A stretch of 64,000 nucleotides of DNA from Podarcis bocagei (Eukaryota). Shown in pieces: positions 548-50,063 of the stretch; position 1 is the first letter of the stretch, and each line of letters opens with the position of its first letter. The notes under the pieces were generated by a model, which was not told the origin of the DNA, made no database searches, and saw only the letters and a list, made by a program, of their open reading frames with translations. Location of the stretch: the NCBI GenBank assembly GCA_964188305.1, contig OZ076889.1, one strand, 5' to 3'. The position numbers and the translations under genes are program-made.

Positions 548-3500
548 CTGCAAATATAAAGTGTTTCAAGATCACATTTTACCAATCTTAATTCATGTAG
601 TATATACAGTGGTACTTCGGGTTACATACGCTTCAGGTTAAATACGCTTCAGGTTACAGACTCTGCTAACCCAGAAATAGTACCTCAGGTTAAGAACTTT
701 GCTTCAGGATGAGAACAGAAATCGTGCTCCGGCAGTGCGGCAGCAGCAGGAGGCCCCATTAGCTAAAGTGGTGCTTCAGGTTAAGAACAGTTTCAGGTTA
801 TGAACAGACCTCCGGAACGAATTAAGTACTTCACCCAAGGTACCACTGTAATATGTATACTGTGGCCAGACAATGCCTTAGCCAAGCAATAATCCATTAT
901 ACAGTGGTACCTTGGTTTACAACCACAATCCATTCTGGAGGTCCAGTTGTAAACCAAAACAGGTTGTAACCCAAGGCATGCTTTCACCAATGGGGCCTTC
1001 CCCCCCCCCCCCAATGTTTGTAATCCAAAAAAAGGGACACACACTTCCAGGTTTGACGTGGTTGTAATCCAAATGGTTGTAATCCAAAGCGGTTGCAAAC
1101 CAAGGTACCACTGTAGTGTGTATATTGATTAGACTAACACGTAGGCTAATGTTCACATGTAGGCTAAGGTCCATTGACTGCAGAGGCACTCTGGCCTTTA
1201 ATAATTGAAATCTACTTGCTGAAAGCATCCCCAAAACACAGTTCAAGATCTGTTTATGTTCAAGAGATTTGACTCCAGACATGTATTGAAACCTATTTTA
1301 AAAATGAAACTTGTGACCCATCATGCCAAATGCAGTCCATCAGCTAAGAATGGCACCTAACAGGATCATAATGAGCTGCTTGCTTTTGATGTCTGCTGAA
1401 ATACAGAGTTATCAAACAACTGGCAGCTTATGATATATAGCTGGTGAGCCAGGTTTGGCTTGGTGGGTCAAAAACTATACATGCCTATTATAAACAAAGG
1501 TCAATGTCCCAAGAAACAGTCTATGTTTCTACATCTAATCTTTTGCATATACAGGGGCTGTTGTGGTAGATCTTCATAGTAGCTCAACACTCTACACATA
1601 GTAGCTAATAATACAATAACAAATACTGCCTTGCAGGCACCAATACTGCAATCCCACATTTACCTGGAGTTAAGTCTCAGTTAACTCCATGGGACTGACT
1701 TGTATGCAGTCGTGCAGATGATTGTGCTGTAAACATACAAATCTGCACCTGTTGATGTCAACAATGAAACTGACTGGTTTTAATAAAACCAGATTGTGGA
1801 CCAAATAGTTAATTAAGAGTATTGATTCTTACCACCACCTATCAATATGAATGCTTACCCAGGAATATATTTCTGTGAAGGTGATAGACCAACAAGATCT
1901 GAATTTATGAAAAGAATATGTAAACAATATTTTCATAAAGTAATATATTAAATATGAAGTATCATACATGCAAACAAACCTTAAGAATTAAAGAATCAAG
2001 TTGCTTTTGGCACATGGAAACATCCACAATATTTTCTTTTACCACTGATTTTTGGGGAACTTTCTTATCTTCAGAATCATCCTGGTTCACCTGCAGCAGC
2101 TGTAATCATAGGCATTTCTTAATCTTTCTACTGTAATTTATAGATTGGAAATCTCATATCAATATGGTTGCTTCATTTTGCATATTTATTGGAAAAGGAG
2201 TAAAGAGAGAAAAGAGAGAACTCAACAAAATTTGTTACTCATTGCTGCTGAATGCATGAACAAGAAATAATACTAACAAAACAATTTAACTAATTACATT
2301 GTTTGTAGTATAAACATGCTAACCAAATATGTATTTTCCCTCTCATTTACTGGGTTCTCAGCTCACTGGTACTTTGTGTAAATCAAACTGGCGCGATGCA
2401 AGTTTCATAATATAGTAATTTATGATTTATACCCTGCCCAAACTTCCCTAAACAGGGCTGCCTTCAGATGTCTTCTAAAAGTCAGATAGTTGTTTATTTC
2501 CTTGACATCTGATGGAAGGACATTCCACAGGGTGAGTGCCACTACCAGTAAGGGAACCGCCAGAAGGGGGTGGAGACGCTCCTTCAGGTATAGCGGACCG
2601 AGGCCGTTTAGGGCTTTAAAGATCAGCACCAACACTTTGAATTGTGCTTGGAAACGTACTGGAAGCCAATGTAGGTCTTTCAAGACCGATGTTATGTGGT
2701 CTCGGTGGCTGCTCCCAGTCACCAGTCTAGTTGCCGCATTCTGGATTAATTGTAGTTTTTCGGTCACCTTCAAAGGTAGCCCCATGTATAGCGCATTGCA
2801 GTAGTCCAAGCAGGAGATAATCAGAGCTCTTGCGACACAGTCTGTAGGCAGGTAAGGTCTCAGCCTGCGTACCAAATGAAGCTGGTAGACAGCTGCCCTG
2901 GACACAGAATTGACCTGTGCCTCCATGGACAGCTGTGAGTCCAAAATGACTCCCAGGCCTCTTCAGGGGCACAGTTACCCCATTCAGGACCAGGGAATCC
3001 TCCACACCTGCCCTCCCCCTGTCCCCCCAAAACAGTATTTCTGTCTTGTCAGGATTCAACCTCAATCTGTTAGCCGCCATCCATCCTCCAACTGCCTCCA
3101 GGCACTCACACAGGACCTTCACCGCCTTCACTGGTTCCGATTTGAAAGAGAGGTAGAGCTGGGTATCATCCGCATACTGATGAACACCCAGCCCAAACCC
3201 CCTGATGATCTCTCCCAGCGGCTTCATGTAGATGTTAAAAAACATGAGAGAGAGGATGGAACCCTGAGGTACCCCACAAGTGAGAGCCCAGGGGTCTGAA
3301 CACTCATCCCCCAACACCACTTTCTGGACACGGCCCAGGAGGGAGGAGTGGAACCACTGTATAACAGTGCCCCCAGCTCCCAGCTCCTCTAGACGGTCCA
3401 GAAGGATGTCATGGTCGATAGTATCAAAGACCGCTGAGTGATCCAGCAGAACTAGGAAACAACTTTCACCTGTCCCTAGCCCGCCGGAGATCATCGACCA

Positions 3501-4466
3501 GCGCAACCAAGACAGTTTCAGTCCCATGATGAGGCCTGAATCCCGACCGGAAGGGACCCAAATGGTCCGCATCCTCCAGGCGTGCTTGGAGTTGTTCAGC
3601 AACCACCTGCTCAATCACCTTGCCCAAGAATGGAAGATTTGAGGCTGGGCAATAGTTGGCCATATCGGCTGGGTCTAAGGATGTTTTTTTTAAGAAGAAG
3701 TTTAATGACCGCCTCTTTCAGCGGGTCTGGGAAGGCTCCCTCACAGAGGGAAGCATTCACCACCCCGCAGAGCCCATCGCCCAGCCCTTCCCGGCTCGCT
3801 TTTATTAGCCATGAGTTTCCCATATTCACTGGGAGTCCCATTCCAGCAGAAGCTGCCCAGTATCCCCTTCAAAACCACAATCTGTGCACTCAAGAGAGGA
3901 TGTGCACAGAGAACTGTCCCAAGCCCTCCTGTCCACATGGTGCTACATGTACAACTGAGAGCACTCAGGGATTATATTTTTTTCAAAAACAAATGGAAAA
4001 GAAAATAACAATGAAATGTGGAAGAGTATTTGGCAGCCTTCAACCAACTATTACTTCCTTCCAATCCCTTTTTTGTAATTACTCTGTTTGAATCTAAAGA
4101 TGCAATCAGAGCTCAGTAAGACACCCCTATCAACTAATCAGTTGATCATTAGGACAGAATGGAATCGTTCCAGTAAGAAAAAACAATGCTCAACTCTAGG
4201 TTTATTAATATTAATTTGTTGCAGTATGTGTTCTGTAAGGGAGGCAATCCAGACATCCATGGTGAACAGGTTCTTTAAAGGGCATCAACTAAACCATTTA
4301 CTGAACAGCAACTCAAATTCAAAATGTGTACCTTATCAGGCTTTCTCATGGTTCCTGAAGCTGCATCATAGTTCAGCATGTCTGTTGGATCAATCCAGTC
4401 ATCATTTTGAGTTTCGCTACCTCCTATCAGCAGGATTACACACAGTATCAAAGGAGCTAGCATCAT
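437..4466 (-). CDS. CLCC1: Chloride channel CLIC-like 1, first three coding exons (gene continues off the left edge)
   Basis: Exons 4466-4332, 2090-1980 and 547-437 splice in phase 0 with GT-AG ends. The peptide has a signal-peptide-like start, [21 protein letters not shown] and [17 protein letters not shown], matching vertebrate CLCC1 as recalled. Confidence 0.93.
607..848. mobile_element. Non-autonomous Tc1/mariner-pogo (Tigger-like) MITE
   Basis: TIRs CAGTGGTAC.../...GTACCACTG flanked by TA on both sides; same family as 28596-28811. Confidence 0.85.
902..1113. mobile_element. Tigger-like MITE, different internal family
   Basis: TIRs CAGTGGTACCTTGGTTT / AAACCAAGGTACCACTG with TA TSD. Confidence 0.85.
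1980..2090 (-). CDS. CLCC1: CLCC1 coding exon 2 ([37 protein letters not shown])
   Basis: ctgcag acceptor, GTTTGT donor, 111 nt, open in phase 0; the C..KLDSL..K-like end resembles CLCC1. Confidence 0.82.
2415..3811 (-). mobile_element. L2-clade LINE, 5'-truncated RT fragment with internal deletions
   Basis: RT motifs [21 protein letters not shown] and LDYCNALY in frameshifted ORFs; homologous to 39213-41383. Confidence 0.9.
4332..4466 (-). CDS. CLCC1: CLCC1 coding exon 1 ([45 protein letters not shown])
   Basis: acag|ATG acceptor, AAG|GTACAC donor, 135 nt. Confidence 0.92.
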
Positions 4467-6891: not shown

Positions 6892-7025
6892 CAGGGCTTT
6901 TTCAGCCAGAACTCGCCCGAACTCAACTCCGGCACCTCTCAGGTGGGCACCACTGCCATTATAAGAGAACAAAGGAGGCGTTCTTAGGGATTTCCGGTTC
7001 CTCTTTTTCTAGAAAAATAGCACGG
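6892..7025. mobile_element. hAT-type MITE
   Basis: CAGGGCTTTTT start and GAAAAATAGCACGG end; 8-bp TSD GTCACAGG/GTCACGGG. Confidence 0.7.
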
Positions 7026-7029
7026 GTCA

Positions 7030-7760
7030 CGGGGATTTGTCTTTTCCTCCCCCCACACCATTGATAGGGTTGGCCACGGCCACCGAAAGGGAAAGCTGCT
7101 GCTTTGAAAATGCCTTCCTGAGAGGGAAAACGCTTCTCGCCCGCATTAGACGCCGTGCAACCGTCTTGGGGGGTGAATGAAAAGGGGAAGGCGGAACGGC
7201 AACCCTGGAGAGGGAAAATGCCTCGTCATCCAGGCCCGAAGGGAGCGGGGAGAACGACAGAAGGAGAACCGAGGCCACGACCACTGGCTGGCGGGACGTC
7301 TCCGCCTGAGGGAAAGAGGCGACGGACGGAGGAAAACTGAGGAAACCACCACGCCCACAACCAACGAACACACAACCCCTCCCCCTCCGCCGCATTAGCA
7401 GCGCGCGCGCACCACCTGAGGGATTCGCTTCGCCAACCGCCAACGGTTCCTCGCGCTTTTAAAAACAAGCGAACCAAGGCAACAGACCCTCGCAACTTCC
7501 GGCGGCCACAGCTCAACCGCGCTTCCTCGGATCCGCGAGCTCGGCCGTCATCCGCCTCGGCCTGGCGCTCGGCGTTCGGTGGCTTCCTTCGCTCGCGCCT
7601 CTCGATCGGCGGTCGACTTGGCTCGCCTGCCGCGGGCGCTCTGATAGCCGCCTGATAGGGCGGTGGCGAGGTTGGGATGCTTAAGTTTATATCCGTTTAG
7701 CTCGGCGGGGGTTTCTTGTCTCGACGAGATGCGCGCGGGGTGGTGCTGCAAAAGAGAGGG
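7030..7760 (-). promoter_or_regulatory. CpG island / promoter and probable non-coding first exon of CLCC1
   Basis: High GC and CpG density upstream of the first coding exon; ETS/GABP-type CCGGAAGT on the minus strand near 7495-7502; candidate donor CAG|GTGGTG at 7416/7415. Confidence 0.7.
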
Positions 7761-7934
7761 CAGTTCTTCTCGCCAGAGTGCAGAGGCAAAGGCATCGCAT
7801 CTTATTTCGAAGTAGAGTGCTTTTGGTCTTAAACTGATAGGTTTTACTTTTATTGCAGCAGTAACAGTGCTTAGCCCATTTGCAAAACTAAGCAGGGTCC
7901 GGTGTGGTTTCAAATTGGATGGGGGACCGCCTGT

Positions 7935-8002
7935 TGAGATACCTACATTGTAAGGGGGTTGGACTAGATGATCCTGAGGGTCCCTTCCAAATCCATGATT
8001 CT
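7935..8002 (+). mobile_element. Short CR1 3'-end fragment
   Basis: GGGGTTGGACTAGATGATCCTGAGGGTCCCTTCCAAATCCATGATTCT. Confidence 0.7.
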
Positions 8003-8287
8003 GCGAAACCCAGGACTCTTATGCAGAAGACGGAATTGCAGCTGGTGTACTACAAAAGGGCTGAAAGGTGTAGTAGCCCTGTCCTCCTTGGCGGGCGGGC
8101 AGCCGCTTTAATTTAGAAGTACCCACTGATGGGGATGCGGATGGCGCTGTGGGTTAAACCACAGATCCTAGGACTTGCCGATCAGAAGGCCGGCGGTTCG
8201 AATCCCCTTGACGGGGTGAGCTCCCGTTGCTCGGTCCCTGCTCCTGCCAACCTAGCAGTTTGAAAGCACATCATGTGCAAGTAGATA

Positions 8288-10333
8288 CCGTATTTTTCGC
8301 ACCATAAGACGCACCGGCCCATAAGACGCACCTAGATTTTTTGGGGGGAAATAAAGGGAAAAAATTTTATTTCCCCCCCAGGTGCGCTGCGCTACACCAG
8401 GAGCTTGGGGCGTGCGGAGCTCAGCGCGCCCCAAGCTTCTGCGTGCCGGCAAGGTCTCCGCTAGCGTGGGAGAGCTGGGCGCCTCTCCCAGGGCTAGCGG
8501 ACCCATGCGCTAATCCAGAAGCTTGGGGCAGGCTGAGGTCAGCGCGCCCCAAGCTTCTGCGTGCCGGCAAGCAGTCCGCTAGCCCTGGGAGAGCCGCGGG
8601 GCTCTCCCAGGGCTAGCGGATCGCTGCGCTATACCAGGAGCTTGGGGCGTGCTGAGCTCAGCGCGCCCCAAGCTTCTGCGTGCGCGCAAGCAGTCCGCTA
8701 GTCTTGGGAGAGCCGCGGGGCTCTCCCAGGGCTAGCGGATCGCTGCGCTATACCAGGAGCTTGGGGCGTGCTGAGCTCAGCGCGCCCCAAGCTTCTGCGT
8801 GCGCGCAAGCAGTCCGCTAGCCTTGGGAGAGCCGCGGGGCTCTCCCAGGGCTAGCGGATCGCTGCGCTATACCAGGAGCTTGGGGCGTGCTGAGCTCAGC
8901 GCGCCCCAAGCTTCTAGGTGCGCGCAAGCAGTCCGCTGCCGCCCCAAGCCTCGCGCACCCGGCAGGAGGTCCCACCGGGTGCGCGAGGCTTGGGGCGGCA
9001 GCGGACTGCTTGCGCGCACCTAGAAGCAGCGCGCCCCAAGCTTCTAGGTGCGCGCAAGCAGTCCGCTGCCGCCCCAAGCCTCCCACACCCGGCAGGAGGT
9101 CCCACCGGGTGCGCGAGGCTTGGGGCGGCAGCGGACTGCTTGCCCGCACCTAGAAGCAGCGCGCCCCAAGCTTCTAGGTGCGCGCAAGCAGTCCGCTGCT
9201 GCCCCAAGCCTCGCGCATCCGGCAGGAGGTCCCACCGGGTGCGCGAGGCTTGGGGCGGCAGCGGACTGCTTGCCCGCACCTAGAAGCAGCGCGCCCCAAG
9301 CTTCTAGGTGCGCGCAAGCAGTCCGCTGCCGCCCCAAGCCTCGCGCACCCGGCAGGAGGTACCACCGGGTGCGCGAGGCTTGGGGCGGCAGCGGACTGCT
9401 TGCGCGCACCTAGAAGCAGCGCGCCCCAAGCTTCTAGGTGCGCGCAAGCAGTCCGCTGCCGCCCCAAGCCTCGCGCACCCAGCAGGAGGTCCCACCGGGT
9501 GCGCAAGGCTTGGGGCGGCAGCGGACTGTTTGCGCGCACCTAGAAGCAGCGCGCCCCAAGCTTCTAGGTGCGCGCAAGCAGTCCGCTGCCGCCCCAAGCC
9601 TCGCGCACCCGGCAGGAGGTCCCTGCGGGTGCGCGAGGCTTGGGGCGGCAGTGGACTGCTTGCCCGCACCTAGAAGCTTGGGGCGTGCTGAGCTCAGCGC
9701 GCCCCAAGCTTCTAGGTGCGCGCAAGCAGTCCGCTAGCCTTGGGAGAGCCGCGGGGCTCTCCCAGGGCTAGCGGATCGCTGCGCTACACCAGGAGCTTGG
9801 GGCGTGCTGAGCTCAGCGCGCCCCAAGCTTCTAGGTGCGCGCAAGCAGTCCGCTGCCGCCCCAAGCCTCGCGCACCCGGTGGGACCTCCTGCCGGGTGCA
9901 CGAGGCTTGCAGACACTCGCCCGAAGCAGGGGGAGCCCTCCCGAGGGCTCCCCGTGCTTCGGGCGACAGGCTGCCGCCCCAAGCCTCGCGCACCCGGTGG
10001 GACCTCCTGCCGGGTGCGCGAGGCTTGCAGACACTCCCCGCACGCGCTCTTCCGGCTGGGGAGGTGACCCGCGGCTATAGAGGCTCCTGCCATAGCCGCA
10101 CGTCACCTCTCCAGCCGGGAGAGGGTCGCGGGGGGCTGCTTTAGCCCCGTGCGCGTGCTCTCCCGGCTGGAGAGGTAACACGGGGCTGTAGAGGTTCCTG
10201 CCATAGCCGCGTGTCACCTCTCCAGTCGGGAGAGGGTCGCGGGGCTATGGCGTCTTCGCTCCATAGGACGCACACACATTTCCCCTTCATTTTTGAAGGG
10301 GGAAAAGTGCGTCCTATAGAGCGAAAAATACGG
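8288..10333. mobile_element. Non-autonomous Tc1/mariner-superfamily (Tc2/pogo-like) element with internal palindrome array
   Basis: TIRs CCGTATTTTTCGC...GACGCAC / GTGCGTC...GCGAAAAATACGG with TA TSD; ends shared with the 277-bp copy at 22612-22888. Confidence 0.88.
8400..10250. repeat. GC/CpG-rich tandem array of palindromic units (119-bp and 130-bp periods)
   Basis: 119-bp units at about 8404, 8522, 8641, 8760, 8879, 9677 and 9796; six 130-bp units at 8911, 9041, 9171, 9301, 9431 and 9561, each with a 52-bp arm, 12-nt loop and 52-bp arm. Confidence 0.95.
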
Positions 10334-11725
10334 TAAATAGGTACCGCTCCAGCGGGAAGGTAAACTGCTCTGGTTCGCCAGAAGCAGCTTAGTCATGCTG
10401 GCCACATGACCCGGAAGCTGTACACCGGCCAATAAAGCGAGATGAGCACCGCAACCCCAGTCGGCCACGACTGGACCTAATGGTCAGGGGTCCCTTTGCC
10501 TTTAACTTACCCACTGATGGTAAATTTTGTTTAACTTCCCTCTTTTGTAACATCCTCAAGCTTCATTTAAGCTGTGTAAGTTTTTGTTTTTTAAAGTGTA
10601 TTGTCTTTAATATAGTAAAAGTTTTAAAGAGGTTCGTTACAGAACAGTTGCAGAACAGTATGTGCACCTACCGTTCTCCATTAATCTGTGTTGTCTTTTG
10701 TTGAGTTTTCAGGGATTTGTTTTACTGGATTATTATATAGTCCACCAAAACTGAGCACCTTTTTAAAGGGAGAACAGTGACACCCACAGGAGATAGACCA
10801 GCCAAGATTTTAGGTACAGTAATCCTGTAATGCACTGGTTTTTCCAACTGGTGGATTGGGAGAGTTTCAGCCTGATCTAAGTGGGGTCACAACAGCAGCA
10901 TGCAAACATATGTTAAATGATGAAGAAAAGTTCATGTTCAGCTCCTGTTAATGATCTTTTTGTCAGGGAGGTGCATGCCTTTGCCAGGGTATGCTCCTAC
11001 TGCCTTGATGCAAATATCTGTTTTGTCTTGGAAGGTTAAGTACCCTGAGACTTAAGCTGCATACACACTTAACTGTTGAAAGTGTGAAACCATATATCTG
11101 AATAAGGTATTATGCATACTTGCTTACAACTTGCTGCTTTCCATCCACAAAGGTGGGTATGGTTAGGTGATATACACTGGAAATCCCTCCCTTTGATAGG
11201 GTTTCCTATGCTTTTTCTATACACACCTATTATCTCCCACAGGAACATGAGTACCTGTGCGTGTAGGTTATAACTGTTGTTGTAATTTGTACATTAATAT
11301 TATTGGACAAGTTCAGATTTTTCAGACAATCAGAAAAAAGCAGGAACTGTCAGTTAAAAGTATTGCTATTTTTCTAGGAAAAAAGGTGCGGGAACTCATC
11401 ATAAACACCTCCCTCGTTCTTTTAGAATGGCCCTTGCCCACTTTGAAATAGGCGTAAGACCTCTGGAATATGTGGGTATTTTCCTCCCTGCCTGAAGCAA
11501 AGCCACTCAAGCACACCCATTGAGTTGGCAATCTAGAAAGCCCTGGAAGAGGAGTAGCCACATGTATAAGGCTAATTGAAATAATTAAGATCAGGAGCAA
11601 TATTTTTAAATTTGTCCTATTCCTTGTTTTAGAACAGCGTCCATAGTGCAATGTATAATAATTAGACATCTTTGAGAATAGAAATGCCAAAATAATTTCT
11701 CATTTCTCTATCAGGTGTCAAAGTC

Positions 11726-11731
11726 TTTATT
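11726..11731 (-). terminator. Candidate WDR47 polyadenylation signal AATAAA (3' UTR about 1.4 kb)
   Basis: AATAAA on the minus strand at the end of an AT-rich 3' UTR-like tract; alternatives at 11812-11817 and 12742-12747. Confidence 0.5.
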
Positions 11732-13095
11732 GAGTTTAAAGCACGTATACATTTCTATGGTAACCTCAACTTTTTATGATAGTTAAAAAGGTCTTGCTAC
11801 AGTGCACATAATTTATTATTAAGAACCAAATCTTAACTGTACTTCAAATAAATAACCTAAATATTCAAGAATTTAATTTAAAACCATAACTGTACAATAT
11901 GAAAATATAAACAATACATAAAACATAATACTCTAAAGATATTTAGAAATAAATTTGTAATTCTGTATTATATAGACAGTGCAAGAAATTAAAAAAAAAT
12001 ATCAAATAAGCCTCTGAACTGGGAAATCATTTACTTTTACATTATCATGCAGACATAGCATTTCAAGCCATGCTGTTGCCTTTAATATGGTACTCTACAT
12101 GCACACACAGGAGAAACAGCATGTGCAGCCAGAGGTTGCTTTGAAGACTTCATCATAGTCATTTGCACAGTTACAATAGCAAGCTACTTCTCCGCTTCAT
12201 ATATATTAAAATCTTCAGCAATACAATCAGTTCTGATAGAAACTTCAGAGAAATCCCTAGCTGCATACAGTTTTCTCCCATGTGTGCATGAGGGTTTGAG
12301 GAATCGTGGCTGTAGTTATTAAAATTACTCTTACCAACCATATCCAACTGCATGCTTTCTTTCCTACGGTACCTTACAAAGAGGTATTTTGTTGCATTCA
12401 AAAGTTTTAACATCTCTTCAGCAAACCAATAGGCTTTTTCCCCACCTAAAGCTTAGGAGTGTAGAACATCCAATCAAAACAATCTCAGTTAAAAACCAAC
12501 ATATTATACCTAATGGACTGTGATCAAGAGTCAGCCACTACCTAACCACCTTTCAAGTTCACAATTATAGATACTAAAATCAAAATATGAAATTTTGATG
12601 CAAAACAAATTTGACCACTAGTTAAGATGTGATGTAAGCAACGGTGTAAAATACAGCATAACTAGTTGTTGTTTTAAAAAAATCTATTTTGTGTGGACCT
12701 AGCGATATTTCATGTGAACTTGAGTTAATTATGAATCAGTTTTTATTCCTGTAGAAAATAAAACAGTCATAGAGGCAAAGACCAGAGAATGCAATAAACA
12801 CTAAACTGTAAACACATAATTAGTCTTTTGGAGTGCACACTGACATTGCAAGAGCTTGTTCAACAGACTTCGGCAACAAGACTACGATAGGTCACAGCAG
12901 CATGAGATCACATGGAAAGCACTGAACAATAATACTATCACACACCAACACCTCCTAGCAATCAGGTAACTGAAGGGAAACATCTCTTCTCCATGAGATG
13001 CTTTCCTGATCAAATGCTGCTCTTTTTAATGCCTAATTTAATGTTCCAATAGTCTTAAATGTGTGTGCTTTATCTGTAGGCTTAAAAACTACTCT

Positions 13096-35588
<22,493 letters not shown>

Positions 35589-49932: not shown

Positions 49933-50063
49933 NNNNNNNNNNNNNNNNNNNNNNNNNNNNNNNNNNNNNNNNNNNNNNNNNNNNNNNNNNNNNNNNNNNN
50001 NNNNNNNNNNNNNNNNNNNNNNNNNNNNNNNNNNNNNNNNNNNNNNNNNNNNNNNNNNNNNNN
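49933..50063. other. Assembly gap (131 N)
   Basis: Run of N immediately after an L2 3'-UTR fragment at about 49865-49932. Confidence 0.99.

What the first reader, a model, noticed from the sequence alone, without database searches (positions are those of the whole stretch)
8288..10333. MITE expanded about 7-fold by a tandem array of long palindromes, between the WDR47 3' end and the CLCC1 promoter
Seen: an element with CCGTATTTTTCGC TIRs and a TA TSD is 2046 bp here, while its sibling at 22612-22888 is 277 bp with a single hairpin. The extra interior is almost all self-complementary modules. Six 130-bp units (8911-9676) each have a 52-bp arm, a 12-nt loop CAGGAGGTCCCA, the reverse-complement arm and a 14-nt spacer. 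They are flanked by 119-bp units that each carry two hairpins (a GAGCTC-centred palindrome and a GCGG-loop stem). CpGs are largely undecayed. The element starts about 0.8 kb upstream of the CLCC1 start region and ends about 1.4 kb past the likely WDR47 poly(A) signal. Inference: it is a young, cruciform-prone satellite seed. Transcription from either strand (WDR47 read-through or CLCC1 upstream antisense) would give a string of about 116-nt hairpins, potential Drosha/Dicer/ADAR substrates, and the array adds a mobile CpG-rich block next to a housekeeping promoter.
Basis: partly seen in the sequence, partly recalled or inferred. Interest (0 to 1): 0.75.

Follow-up and report, generated by a model that had tools for sequence, protein, structure and literature searches.

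The report
Lizard MITE carrying palindromic tandem arrays
A 2-kb non-coding cut-and-paste transposon between two lizard genes is filled with tandem copies of long DNA palindromes; it is real, but it is one more example of the known repeat-carrying MITEs, and nothing shows that it affects its neighbours.

Summary
Window 8288-10333 is a 2046-bp element with exact 13-nt terminal inverted repeats. It sits inside a tRNA-derived squamate SINE. Two other copies of that SINE in the window read straight through the site with a single TA, which fixes the borders and the TA target duplication.

The interior is non-coding, 69% GC, with CpG o/e 0.84. It is built almost wholly of hairpin modules: a 119-bp two-hairpin unit x4.7, a 130-bp palindromic unit x6.0, and four further hairpins.

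The 130-bp unit is a fold-back copy of a segment still present once in the element. Its loop is flipped and it has an 18-bp deletion.

Twelve stem substitutions among the six units are all uncompensated, so pairing is decaying neutrally.

The 277-bp "sibling" shares only the termini. "Expanded 7-fold" is therefore a size ratio, not a shown derivation.

The hairpin-RNA and CLCC1 effects remain untested.

This kind is known from miDNA4 and Xstir in Xenopus, DTC84 in a clam and Tetris in Drosophila. This scan had already noted many such MITEs on other DNA of the same genome.

Verdict: new member of a known kind, low to moderate interest.

The parts
8286..8287 (.). left copy of the TA target-site duplication
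   Evidence: Host SINE with the element and one TA removed reads ...TAGATAAATAGG, as do two paralogous SINE copies.
8288..8300 (+). left terminal inverted repeat, 13 nt exact (about 27 nt with 4 mismatches)
8288..8384 (+). left terminal cassette: TIR, two direct 12-mers CATAAGACGCAC, and an A/T-G/C hairpin
   Evidence: Read directly. Its first 61 nt (8288-8348) are 81% identical to the 22612 copy. Weak hairpin, z -2.3.
8385..8937 (.). 119-bp two-hairpin unit x4.7 (H1 palindrome centred on GAGCTC, H2 stem with GCGG loop)
   Evidence: TRF. Fold -52.8 kcal/mol, z -9. Central units match 118/119; outer units 101-108/119.
8897..9677 (.). 130-bp palindromic unit x6.0 (52-bp arm, 12-nt loop, arm', 14-nt spacer)
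9677..9861 (.). one further 119-type unit, then H1 and linker, in direct orientation
9862..10027 (.). H3 hairpin, H4 hairpin, second H3 (118-bp period); the H3 loop is the reverse complement of the loop in the array units
   Evidence: (I18, I24)
10040..10245 (.). two diverged copies of a fifth hairpin (H5)
   Evidence: (I12)
10255..10333 (+). right terminal cassette with terminal hairpin, ending in the right TIR (10321-10333)
   Evidence: 96% identical over 79 nt to 22810-22888. Fold z -8.8.
10334..10335 (.). right copy of the TA target-site duplication
8120..10510 (+). host tRNA-derived squamate SINE, split by the insertion (about 8120-8287 and 10336-10510)
   Evidence: Aligns across the junction with SINE copies at 62467-62155 (82%) and 13758-13648 (84%).
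22612..22888 (+). 277-bp family member with the same TIRs, one interior hairpin and TG/TA flanks
7000..7799 (-). CpG island upstream of the CLCC1 first coding exon (4275-4466, minus strand); presumed promoter and exon 1
   Evidence: CpG o/e 0.81-1.42. MCLC Pfam hit on the exon. The transcription start was not mapped.
13096..13212 (-). last coding exon of the WD40 gene read as WDR47
   Evidence: ORF ending ...WTYNG*. WD40 Pfam hits on upstream exons. The name WDR47 rests on my recollection of the human protein and of CLCC1-WDR47 synteny.

Best explanation
This is a non-autonomous cut-and-paste DNA transposon (a MITE) of a TA-duplicating, Tc1/mariner/pogo-like family. It inserted once, as a unit, into a TA inside a SINE in the WDR47-CLCC1 spacer.

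Its two short terminal cassettes carry the TIR and repeated 12-mers, which are probably the transposase binding sites. They act as a carrier for a variable GC-rich interior built of hairpin modules.

The interior grew by DNA-level processes that palindromes favour. First, a strand switch (fold-back) at the H3 hairpin turned a 'half-H1 + linker + H3' segment into a long palindrome. Second, an 18-bp deletion in the neighbouring H1 palindrome cut the period from 148 to 130 bp. Third, slippage or unequal exchange multiplied that unit to six, and the 119-bp two-hairpin unit to about five.

My inference, at about 60:40, is that most of this modular interior came in with the donor copy, and that only some copy-number change happened in place.

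The hairpins are a by-product of DNA mechanics, not a selected RNA fold. The element is most likely neutral passenger DNA that happens to add 2 kb of CpG-island-grade sequence 0.5-0.9 kb from the CLCC1 CpG island.
For: Shown:
- Exact TIRs in inverted pairs.
- A precise paralogous empty site with a single TA in two other SINE copies.
- The interior is fully accounted for by tandem and hairpin modules.
- A 121-aa ORF across the array has no relative among 1.84 billion protein representatives.
- A fold-back built from the single-copy segment 9826-9891 matches array unit 1 at 119/119 when the loop is flipped, against 113/119 unflipped.
- The array spacer is the right half of H1 lacking 18 nt. The last unit, at 9677, keeps the full H1.
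- There are 14 substitutions among the six units. Twelve are in stems, and in every case the partner base is unchanged.
- A second family member has the same termini and an unrelated interior.
- The same 27-nt terminus, preceded by TA, occurs at the end of a metagenome contig.

From the literature: MITEs with internal arrays of variable copy number are described for miDNA4 and Xstir (review PMC12628747), DTC84 (PMC3879986) and Tetris (PMC4079207).

Leads only: earlier notes of this scan describe many such MITEs in this genome, including 118-119-bp two-hairpin arrays and a 148-bp hairpin array.
Against: - No autonomous partner or transposase was found, so the superfamily rests on the TA duplication and TIRs alone.
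- Only two copies could be examined directly. Genome-wide copy number and interior variation were out of reach.
- Whether the arrays grew before or after insertion is not shown.
- Neutrality is inferred. No RNA, small-RNA or methylation data were seen.
- CpG transitions are only 5 of 14 array substitutions. That is fewer than expected for germline-methylated DNA (P about 0.001-0.04, depending on the assumed rate ratio). It could mean the block is unmethylated like the neighbouring island, and so not simply inert.
- The flipped loop can also arise by flip-flop recombination between the arms.
Confidence: 0.8

Rival explanations
1. WDR47 read-through or CLCC1 upstream antisense transcription runs through the array. 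It yields strings of about 116-nt hairpins that are processed by Drosha/Dicer or edited by ADAR, and the CpG-rich block modifies the CLCC1 promoter.
For: As RNA, each unit would fold on either strand into a near-perfect 52-56-bp duplex (-130 and -135 kcal/mol, z about -17 to -18). The element lies 0.5-0.9 kb from the CpG island and about 1.4 kb beyond a minus-strand AATAAA at about 11726-11731. CpG decay in the array is weak. Runs guessed to be RNA from a related species hold 20-28% of the words of 7300-12300, but which part they hold is unknown.
Against: All Rfam matches are below the gathering score, fall on both strands, and go to unrelated plant and animal miRNA models, so they are generic hairpin hits. 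All twelve stem substitutions are uncompensated. A 52-bp perfect GC-rich stem is not pri-miRNA-shaped; the usual stem is about 35 bp (established knowledge). Similar arrays sit in many other copies regardless of neighbouring genes (earlier scan notes, leads only).
Confidence: 0.07
2. The unit numbers, or the whole array, are an assembly artefact: a mis-expanded or mis-collapsed repeat.
For: No reads could be laid. Tandem palindromes are hard to sequence and assemble.
Against: The six units carry distinct private substitutions in no periodic pattern. The junctions from the 119-bp array into the 130-bp array and back are seamless and in register. The whole element is 2 kb, well within one long read. 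Contig sets from an independent sample of the same species hold 64% of the words of a stretch in which non-element DNA makes up 59%. That is weak support, because other copies can supply those words.
Confidence: 0.05
3. It is a foldback-type (FB/Tetris-like) transposon, whose repeat arrays are themselves the long inverted termini, and not a MITE with cargo.
For: Huge inverted-repeat scores inside the element, for example 425-nt arms at 87%.
Against: Those scores come from the internal palindromic array pairing with itself in several registers. The left interior (H1/H2 units) and the right interior (H4, H5) are not inverted copies of each other. The true terminal inverted repeat is 13-27 nt.
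Confidence: 0.05

Closest known systems
miDNA4 (Tc1/mariner MITE of Xenopus carrying a satellite monomer or array; Scalvenzi and Pollet, as summarised in PMC12628747)
   Same: A TA-type MITE whose interior holds a tandem repeat with a variable number of copies. Proposed as a seed of satellite DNA.
   Different: Here the units are long near-perfect palindromes. At least two unit types plus single hairpins share one element. No free satellite of these units was seen in the window. There is no sequence relation.
Xstir (Xenopus MITE with tandem arrays derived from internal MITE sequence; Hikosaka and Kawahara, via PMC12628747)
   Same: The tandem units derive from the element's own interior through stem-loop-mediated events.
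   Different: Different family and host. Here the unit arises by fold-back at an internal hairpin, not by joining two neighbouring elements.
DTC84 / pearl-like tandem-repeat-containing MITEs of bivalves (PMC3879986)
   Same: Terminal 'cassettes' flank an ordered array of core repeats. A palindrome at unit junctions is proposed as the hotspot for copy-number change. Nearly every copy is unique.
   Different: DTC84 has an AA duplication, up to five core repeats and a microsatellite. Here there is a TA duplication, GC-rich hairpin units and a longer array.
Tetris / Foldback elements of Drosophila (PMC4079207)
   Same: A DNA transposon whose internal tandem repeats are building blocks of an emerging satellite, with extensive self-complementarity.
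   Different: In foldback elements the arrays form the long terminal inverted repeats. Here the TIRs are short and the array is internal cargo.
MITE-derived hairpin RNA genes (for example human miR-548 from Made1; recalled, not checked here)
   Same: A palindromic MITE could fold into a hairpin RNA if transcribed.
   Different: No expression or processing evidence here. The stems are 52 bp and perfect, not pri-miRNA-like. Rfam hits are sub-threshold.

Membership tests
MITE of a TA-duplicating (Tc1/mariner/pogo-like) DNA transposon family | terminal inverted repeats | tested here: met
   13/13 exact, about 27 nt with 4 mismatches
MITE of a TA-duplicating (Tc1/mariner/pogo-like) DNA transposon family | TA target-site duplication, shown against an empty site | tested here: met
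   Two paralogous SINE copies carry a single TA at the site. The metagenome relative is also preceded by TA. The sibling has TG/TA.
MITE of a TA-duplicating (Tc1/mariner/pogo-like) DNA transposon family | no coding capacity | tested here: met
   The interior is entirely hairpin and tandem modules. The array ORF has 0 relatives among 1.84e9 representatives.
MITE of a TA-duplicating (Tc1/mariner/pogo-like) DNA transposon family | autonomous partner with matching TIRs and a DDE/D transposase | not testable with these tools
   No eukaryotic genome collection was on hand. The pattern scans gave one cut contig end and nothing else.
MITE of a TA-duplicating (Tc1/mariner/pogo-like) DNA transposon family | multiple dispersed copies | tested here: inconclusive
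   Two copies in 64 kb. Earlier scan notes report many similar elements, but whether they carry the same TIR was not verified.
Tandem-repeat-containing MITEs | internal tandem array bounded by TIR-bearing flanks | tested here: met
Tandem-repeat-containing MITEs | copy number of the internal repeat varies among copies or alleles | not testable with these tools
Foldback (FB) transposons | long terminal inverted repeats made of the tandem repeats | tested here: not met
   The left and right interiors are different modules, and the TIR is only 13-27 nt.
Rfam miRNA families (MIR1151, mir-449 and others) | score at or above the family's gathering threshold | tested here: not met
   Best hit 70.6 bits against a threshold of 90. 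Hits fall on both strands and go to unrelated families.
Satellite DNA | long arrays of the unit outside the transposon | tested here: inconclusive
   None in the other 62 kb of the window. The genome was not searchable.

The most novel reading that the evidence does not exclude
This genome may have a general process that manufactures GC-rich, CpG-preserving palindromic minisatellites inside unrelated DNA-transposon families. Examples in this window are the TA-type element here and a hAT-like element 4.4 kb away. The process would be hairpin-driven strand switching, perhaps combined with escape from germline methylation. It would then spread CpG-island-grade DNA around genes. This copy would extend the unmethylated CLCC1 promoter domain by 2 kb and/or be transcribed into long hairpin RNA.
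Probability: 0.12. Interest if true: 0.55.

Novelty: new member of a known kind. Interest (0 to 1): 0.25.

Why it matters
It is a clean, fully resolved example of how a palindromic tandem array is built inside a transposon. The source segment and its fold-back product lie in the same element, and the insertion site is proven by paralogous empty sites.

For annotators, such elements will be called CpG islands and miRNA-like hairpins by automatic pipelines next to real promoters. For assemblers, they are cruciform-prone, hard-to-sequence blocks.

If the weak CpG decay reflects real hypomethylation, the family would be a mobile source of CpG-island-like DNA in lizards. That is untested.

Tried and rejected
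1. Reads. So there is no evidence on unit number, filled versus empty alleles, or transcription. Only local whole-window computations (TRF, a local BLAST) touched the window as a whole.

2. The look-up of encoding contigs with four ORFs at the junctions, in the interior and in the flank found nothing on record.

3. A search of 1.84 billion protein representatives with a 121-aa array ORF gave 0 hits. The protein route to other copies is therefore closed, and I did not spend the costly word search.

4. Scans with the 27-nt TIR pattern gave one metagenome contig end (114 bp of element only) and nothing in prokaryote genomes or viral contigs.

5. The TIR string is in no relevant paper; all five hits are unrelated. 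A search for Podarcis, MITE and transposable elements gave nothing useful.

6. Rfam gave only sub-threshold generic hairpin hits.

7. The idea that the 277-bp copy is the unexpanded ancestor is rejected, because no interior homology exists.

8. A foldback-element reading is rejected.

Exons were examined one at a time by reference, so the names CLCC1 (Pfam-supported) and WDR47 (recollection plus WD40 hits) rest on single exons.

Full report
OBSERVATION

The finding is accurate at its coordinates. The 13-mer CCGTATTTTTCGC occurs exactly four times in the 64-kb window. The four form two inverted pairs, bounding 8288-10333 (2046 bp) and 22612-22888 (277 bp). Tandem Repeats Finder reports a 119-bp unit x4.7 (8385-8937, 92% matches) and a 130-bp unit x6.0 (8897-9677, 96% matches).

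Printed in register, each 130-bp unit is a 52-nt arm, a 12-nt loop (CAGGAGGTCCCA), the reverse-complement arm and a 14-nt spacer. As single-stranded DNA one unit folds at -84.4 kcal/mol, against -33 for shuffles (z -16.9). The 119-bp unit folds into two hairpins, one centred on GAGCTC and one with a GCGG loop (z -9.0). The element is 69% GC with CpG o/e 0.84. The window as a whole is 43% GC with CpG o/e 0.39.

BORDERS AND INSERTION

The element sits inside a tRNA-derived SINE (about 8120-10510) with a B-box-like GGTTCGAATCC head. From memory it is the Squam1/Sauria type, which PMC10702118 reports as abundant in lacertids. I could not compare it with a consensus.

When the element and one TA are removed, the host SINE aligns without a break across the junction with two other SINE copies in the window: 62467-62155 (82%) and 13758-13648 (84%). 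Both of those read ...TAGATAAATAGG with a single TA. These paralogous empty sites fix the borders to the base. They show a 2-bp TA duplication and show that the whole 2046 bp occupies a single insertion site.

The 277-bp copy has TG/TA flanks, so one base has changed.

ANATOMY

The interior, from left to right, is as follows:
- A 97-bp left cassette: the TIR, two direct 12-mers CATAAGACGCAC, and an A/T-G/C hairpin.
- About five 119-bp units, each H1 palindrome, linker, H2 hairpin, linker.
- Six 130-bp palindromic units.
- One more 119-type unit, then H1 and linker.
- H3, H4, H3 with a 118-bp period.
- Two diverged H5 hairpins.
- A 79-bp right cassette with a terminal hairpin.

Nothing is left over that could code. 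A 121-aa ORF running through the array has no relative among 1.84 billion protein representatives.

HOW THE 130-BP UNIT AROSE

The arm of the unit equals the right end of H1, the linker and the left arm of H3. This arrangement still exists once, in direct order, at 9826-9879. A fold-back built from 9826-9891 (arm, then the reverse complement of arm plus loop) matches array unit 1 at 119 of 119 positions. The same construct with the loop left unflipped matches 113 of 119. So the two single H3 hairpins (9862-9909 and 9980-10027) carry the loop in the opposite orientation to all six array units.

The arm identity is partly built in, because the arm is also a direct repeat. The informative part is the 12-nt loop.

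The 14-nt spacer is the right half of H1 with 18 nt of its centre missing. The last unit, at 9677, runs into an intact H1. An undeleted unit would therefore be 148 bp.

All six units share the flipped loop and the deletion, so both events came before the tandem amplification. My inference is an inter-strand template switch at the H3 stem, as in quasi-palindrome or fork U-turn models, followed by slippage or unequal exchange. Flip-flop recombination between the arms could flip the loop equally well.

AGE AND MUTATION PATTERN

The 130-bp units are 94-99% identical pairwise. The two central 119-bp units match 118/119, and the outer ones 101-108/119. So the arrays grew in stages and are not brand new.

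Against the consensus, the six 130-bp units carry 14 substitutions. Twelve are in stems, and in all twelve the pairing partner is unchanged. Pairing is therefore eroding, not being maintained.

Only 5 of the 14 are CpG transitions, although CpG positions are a quarter of the unit. If CpGs mutated 5-10 times faster, as in germline-methylated DNA (a rate ratio taken from general knowledge), that few would be unlikely (P 0.04 to 0.001, or 0.13 to 0.01 if a shared change is counted once). This is a hint from a small sample that the block has seen little methylation-driven decay.

FAMILY

The 277-bp copy shares 62 nt at the left end (81%) and 79 nt at the right end (96%), and no interior module. 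It is a different subfamily on the same termini, not the unexpanded form. "Seven-fold" is a size ratio only.

Outside the window, a 27-nt TIR-plus-subterminal pattern found one metagenome contig. There the terminus is again preceded by TA and followed by related GCGCC-rich subterminal repeats, but the contig ends 114 bp into the element. Prokaryote genomes and viral contigs gave nothing.

Earlier notes of this scan are unchecked and are used as leads only. They call this a wall-lizard genome. They list 18 notes on MITEs with hairpin arrays on other pieces of it, including 118-119-bp two-hairpin arrays and a 148-bp hairpin array. Those periods fit the modules and the undeleted unit length that I derive here. 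This suggests the arrays travel with family members, but I could not see those sequences.

GENE CONTEXT

The ORF at 4275-4466(-) hits Pfam MCLC positions 3-46 (1.4e-13), so it is the CLCC1 first coding exon. A CpG island runs 7000-7799 and peaks at 7400-7799 (o/e 1.2-1.4). That is 0.5-0.9 kb from the element's left end.

WD40 exons lie on the minus strand from 13.8 to 21.5 kb, and the last coding exon ends at 13096. I read this gene as WDR47 from memory of the human protein and of its synteny with CLCC1.

A minus-strand AATAAA lies at about 11726-11731, 1.4 kb from the element's right end. Which poly(A) site is used is unknown. By the usual criteria the element itself scores as a 2-kb CpG island.

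FUNCTIONAL CLAIMS

If transcribed, each unit would form a 52-56-bp near-perfect duplex on either strand (-130 and -135 kcal/mol). That is a property, not evidence of expression.

Rfam gives 80 matches, all below the gathering score. They fall on both strands and go to unrelated plant and animal miRNA models. This is the signature of any long perfect hairpin.

No RNA holder was on record for the stretch. Six runs guessed to be RNA from a related species hold 20-28% of its words, but which part is unknown.

Transcription, small RNAs, editing, unit number in reads, and filled versus empty alleles are therefore all untested.

COMPARISON AND VERDICT

MITEs that carry internal tandem arrays and seed satellites are well described:
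- miDNA4 and Xstir in Xenopus (review PMC12628747).
- DTC84, where a palindrome at unit junctions is the proposed hotspot (PMC3879986).
- Tetris (PMC4079207).

This element meets the tested features of a TA-type MITE and of a tandem-repeat-containing MITE. It fails the foldback-element and miRNA-family tests. I file it as a new member of a known kind.

What is specific here is the unusually long, near-perfect palindromic unit and the fact that its source segment survives in the same element.

Noticed in passing
window 14740-15324 (TSD 14732-14739 and 15325-15332): A second, unrelated MITE in an intron of the WD40 gene. It has a 17-nt TIR CAGTGGCGTAGCGTGGG and a perfect 8-bp duplication GTTTCAAA (hAT-like). 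Its interior is a 60-bp x5.3 array of imperfect GC-rich hairpins (14847-15166), and it has an extra internal copy of the left end at 15169-15185. Two unrelated transposon families in one window therefore carry hairpin arrays.
   Followed up: partly
L001 6288-6403 (metagenome contig JGI24158J21664_10029587): The same 27-nt terminus (TIR plus CCATAAGGCGCAC), preceded by TA, lies at the very end of a eukaryote-looking metagenome contig and is followed by GCGCCT-rich subterminal repeats. The terminus family may reach beyond lizards. The organism is unknown.
   Followed up: partly
window 8400-10200: Substitutions between array units show few CpG transitions: 5 of 14 in the 130-bp array and 2 of 35 among the 119-type units. 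This hints at little methylation-driven decay. The sample is small, and one aligned unit is only partly homologous.
   Followed up: partly
window 2727-3614 (-): A 295-aa ORF with a reverse-transcriptase domain (PF00078, 1.2e-20). This is a LINE fragment in the first CLCC1 intron region.
   Followed up: no
window 49933-50063: A run of 131 N in a GC-rich stretch.
   Followed up: no
window 8433-9825: Every 119-bp and 130-bp unit carries a HindIII site (14 sites in all). The 119-type units also carry SacI and SacII sites. A HindIII digest would give a 119/130-bp ladder, so a link to the classical Podarcis restriction satellites (pLHS and others, PMC7397244) is worth checking.
   Followed up: partly
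window 7300-12300: Contig sets of six species labels hold 38-75% of the sampled words of this stretch. Small runs guessed to be RNA from one related species hold 20-28%. That is more than the presumed 3' UTR part alone would give, so the 3' UTR may extend further, or repeat words may be counted.
   Followed up: no
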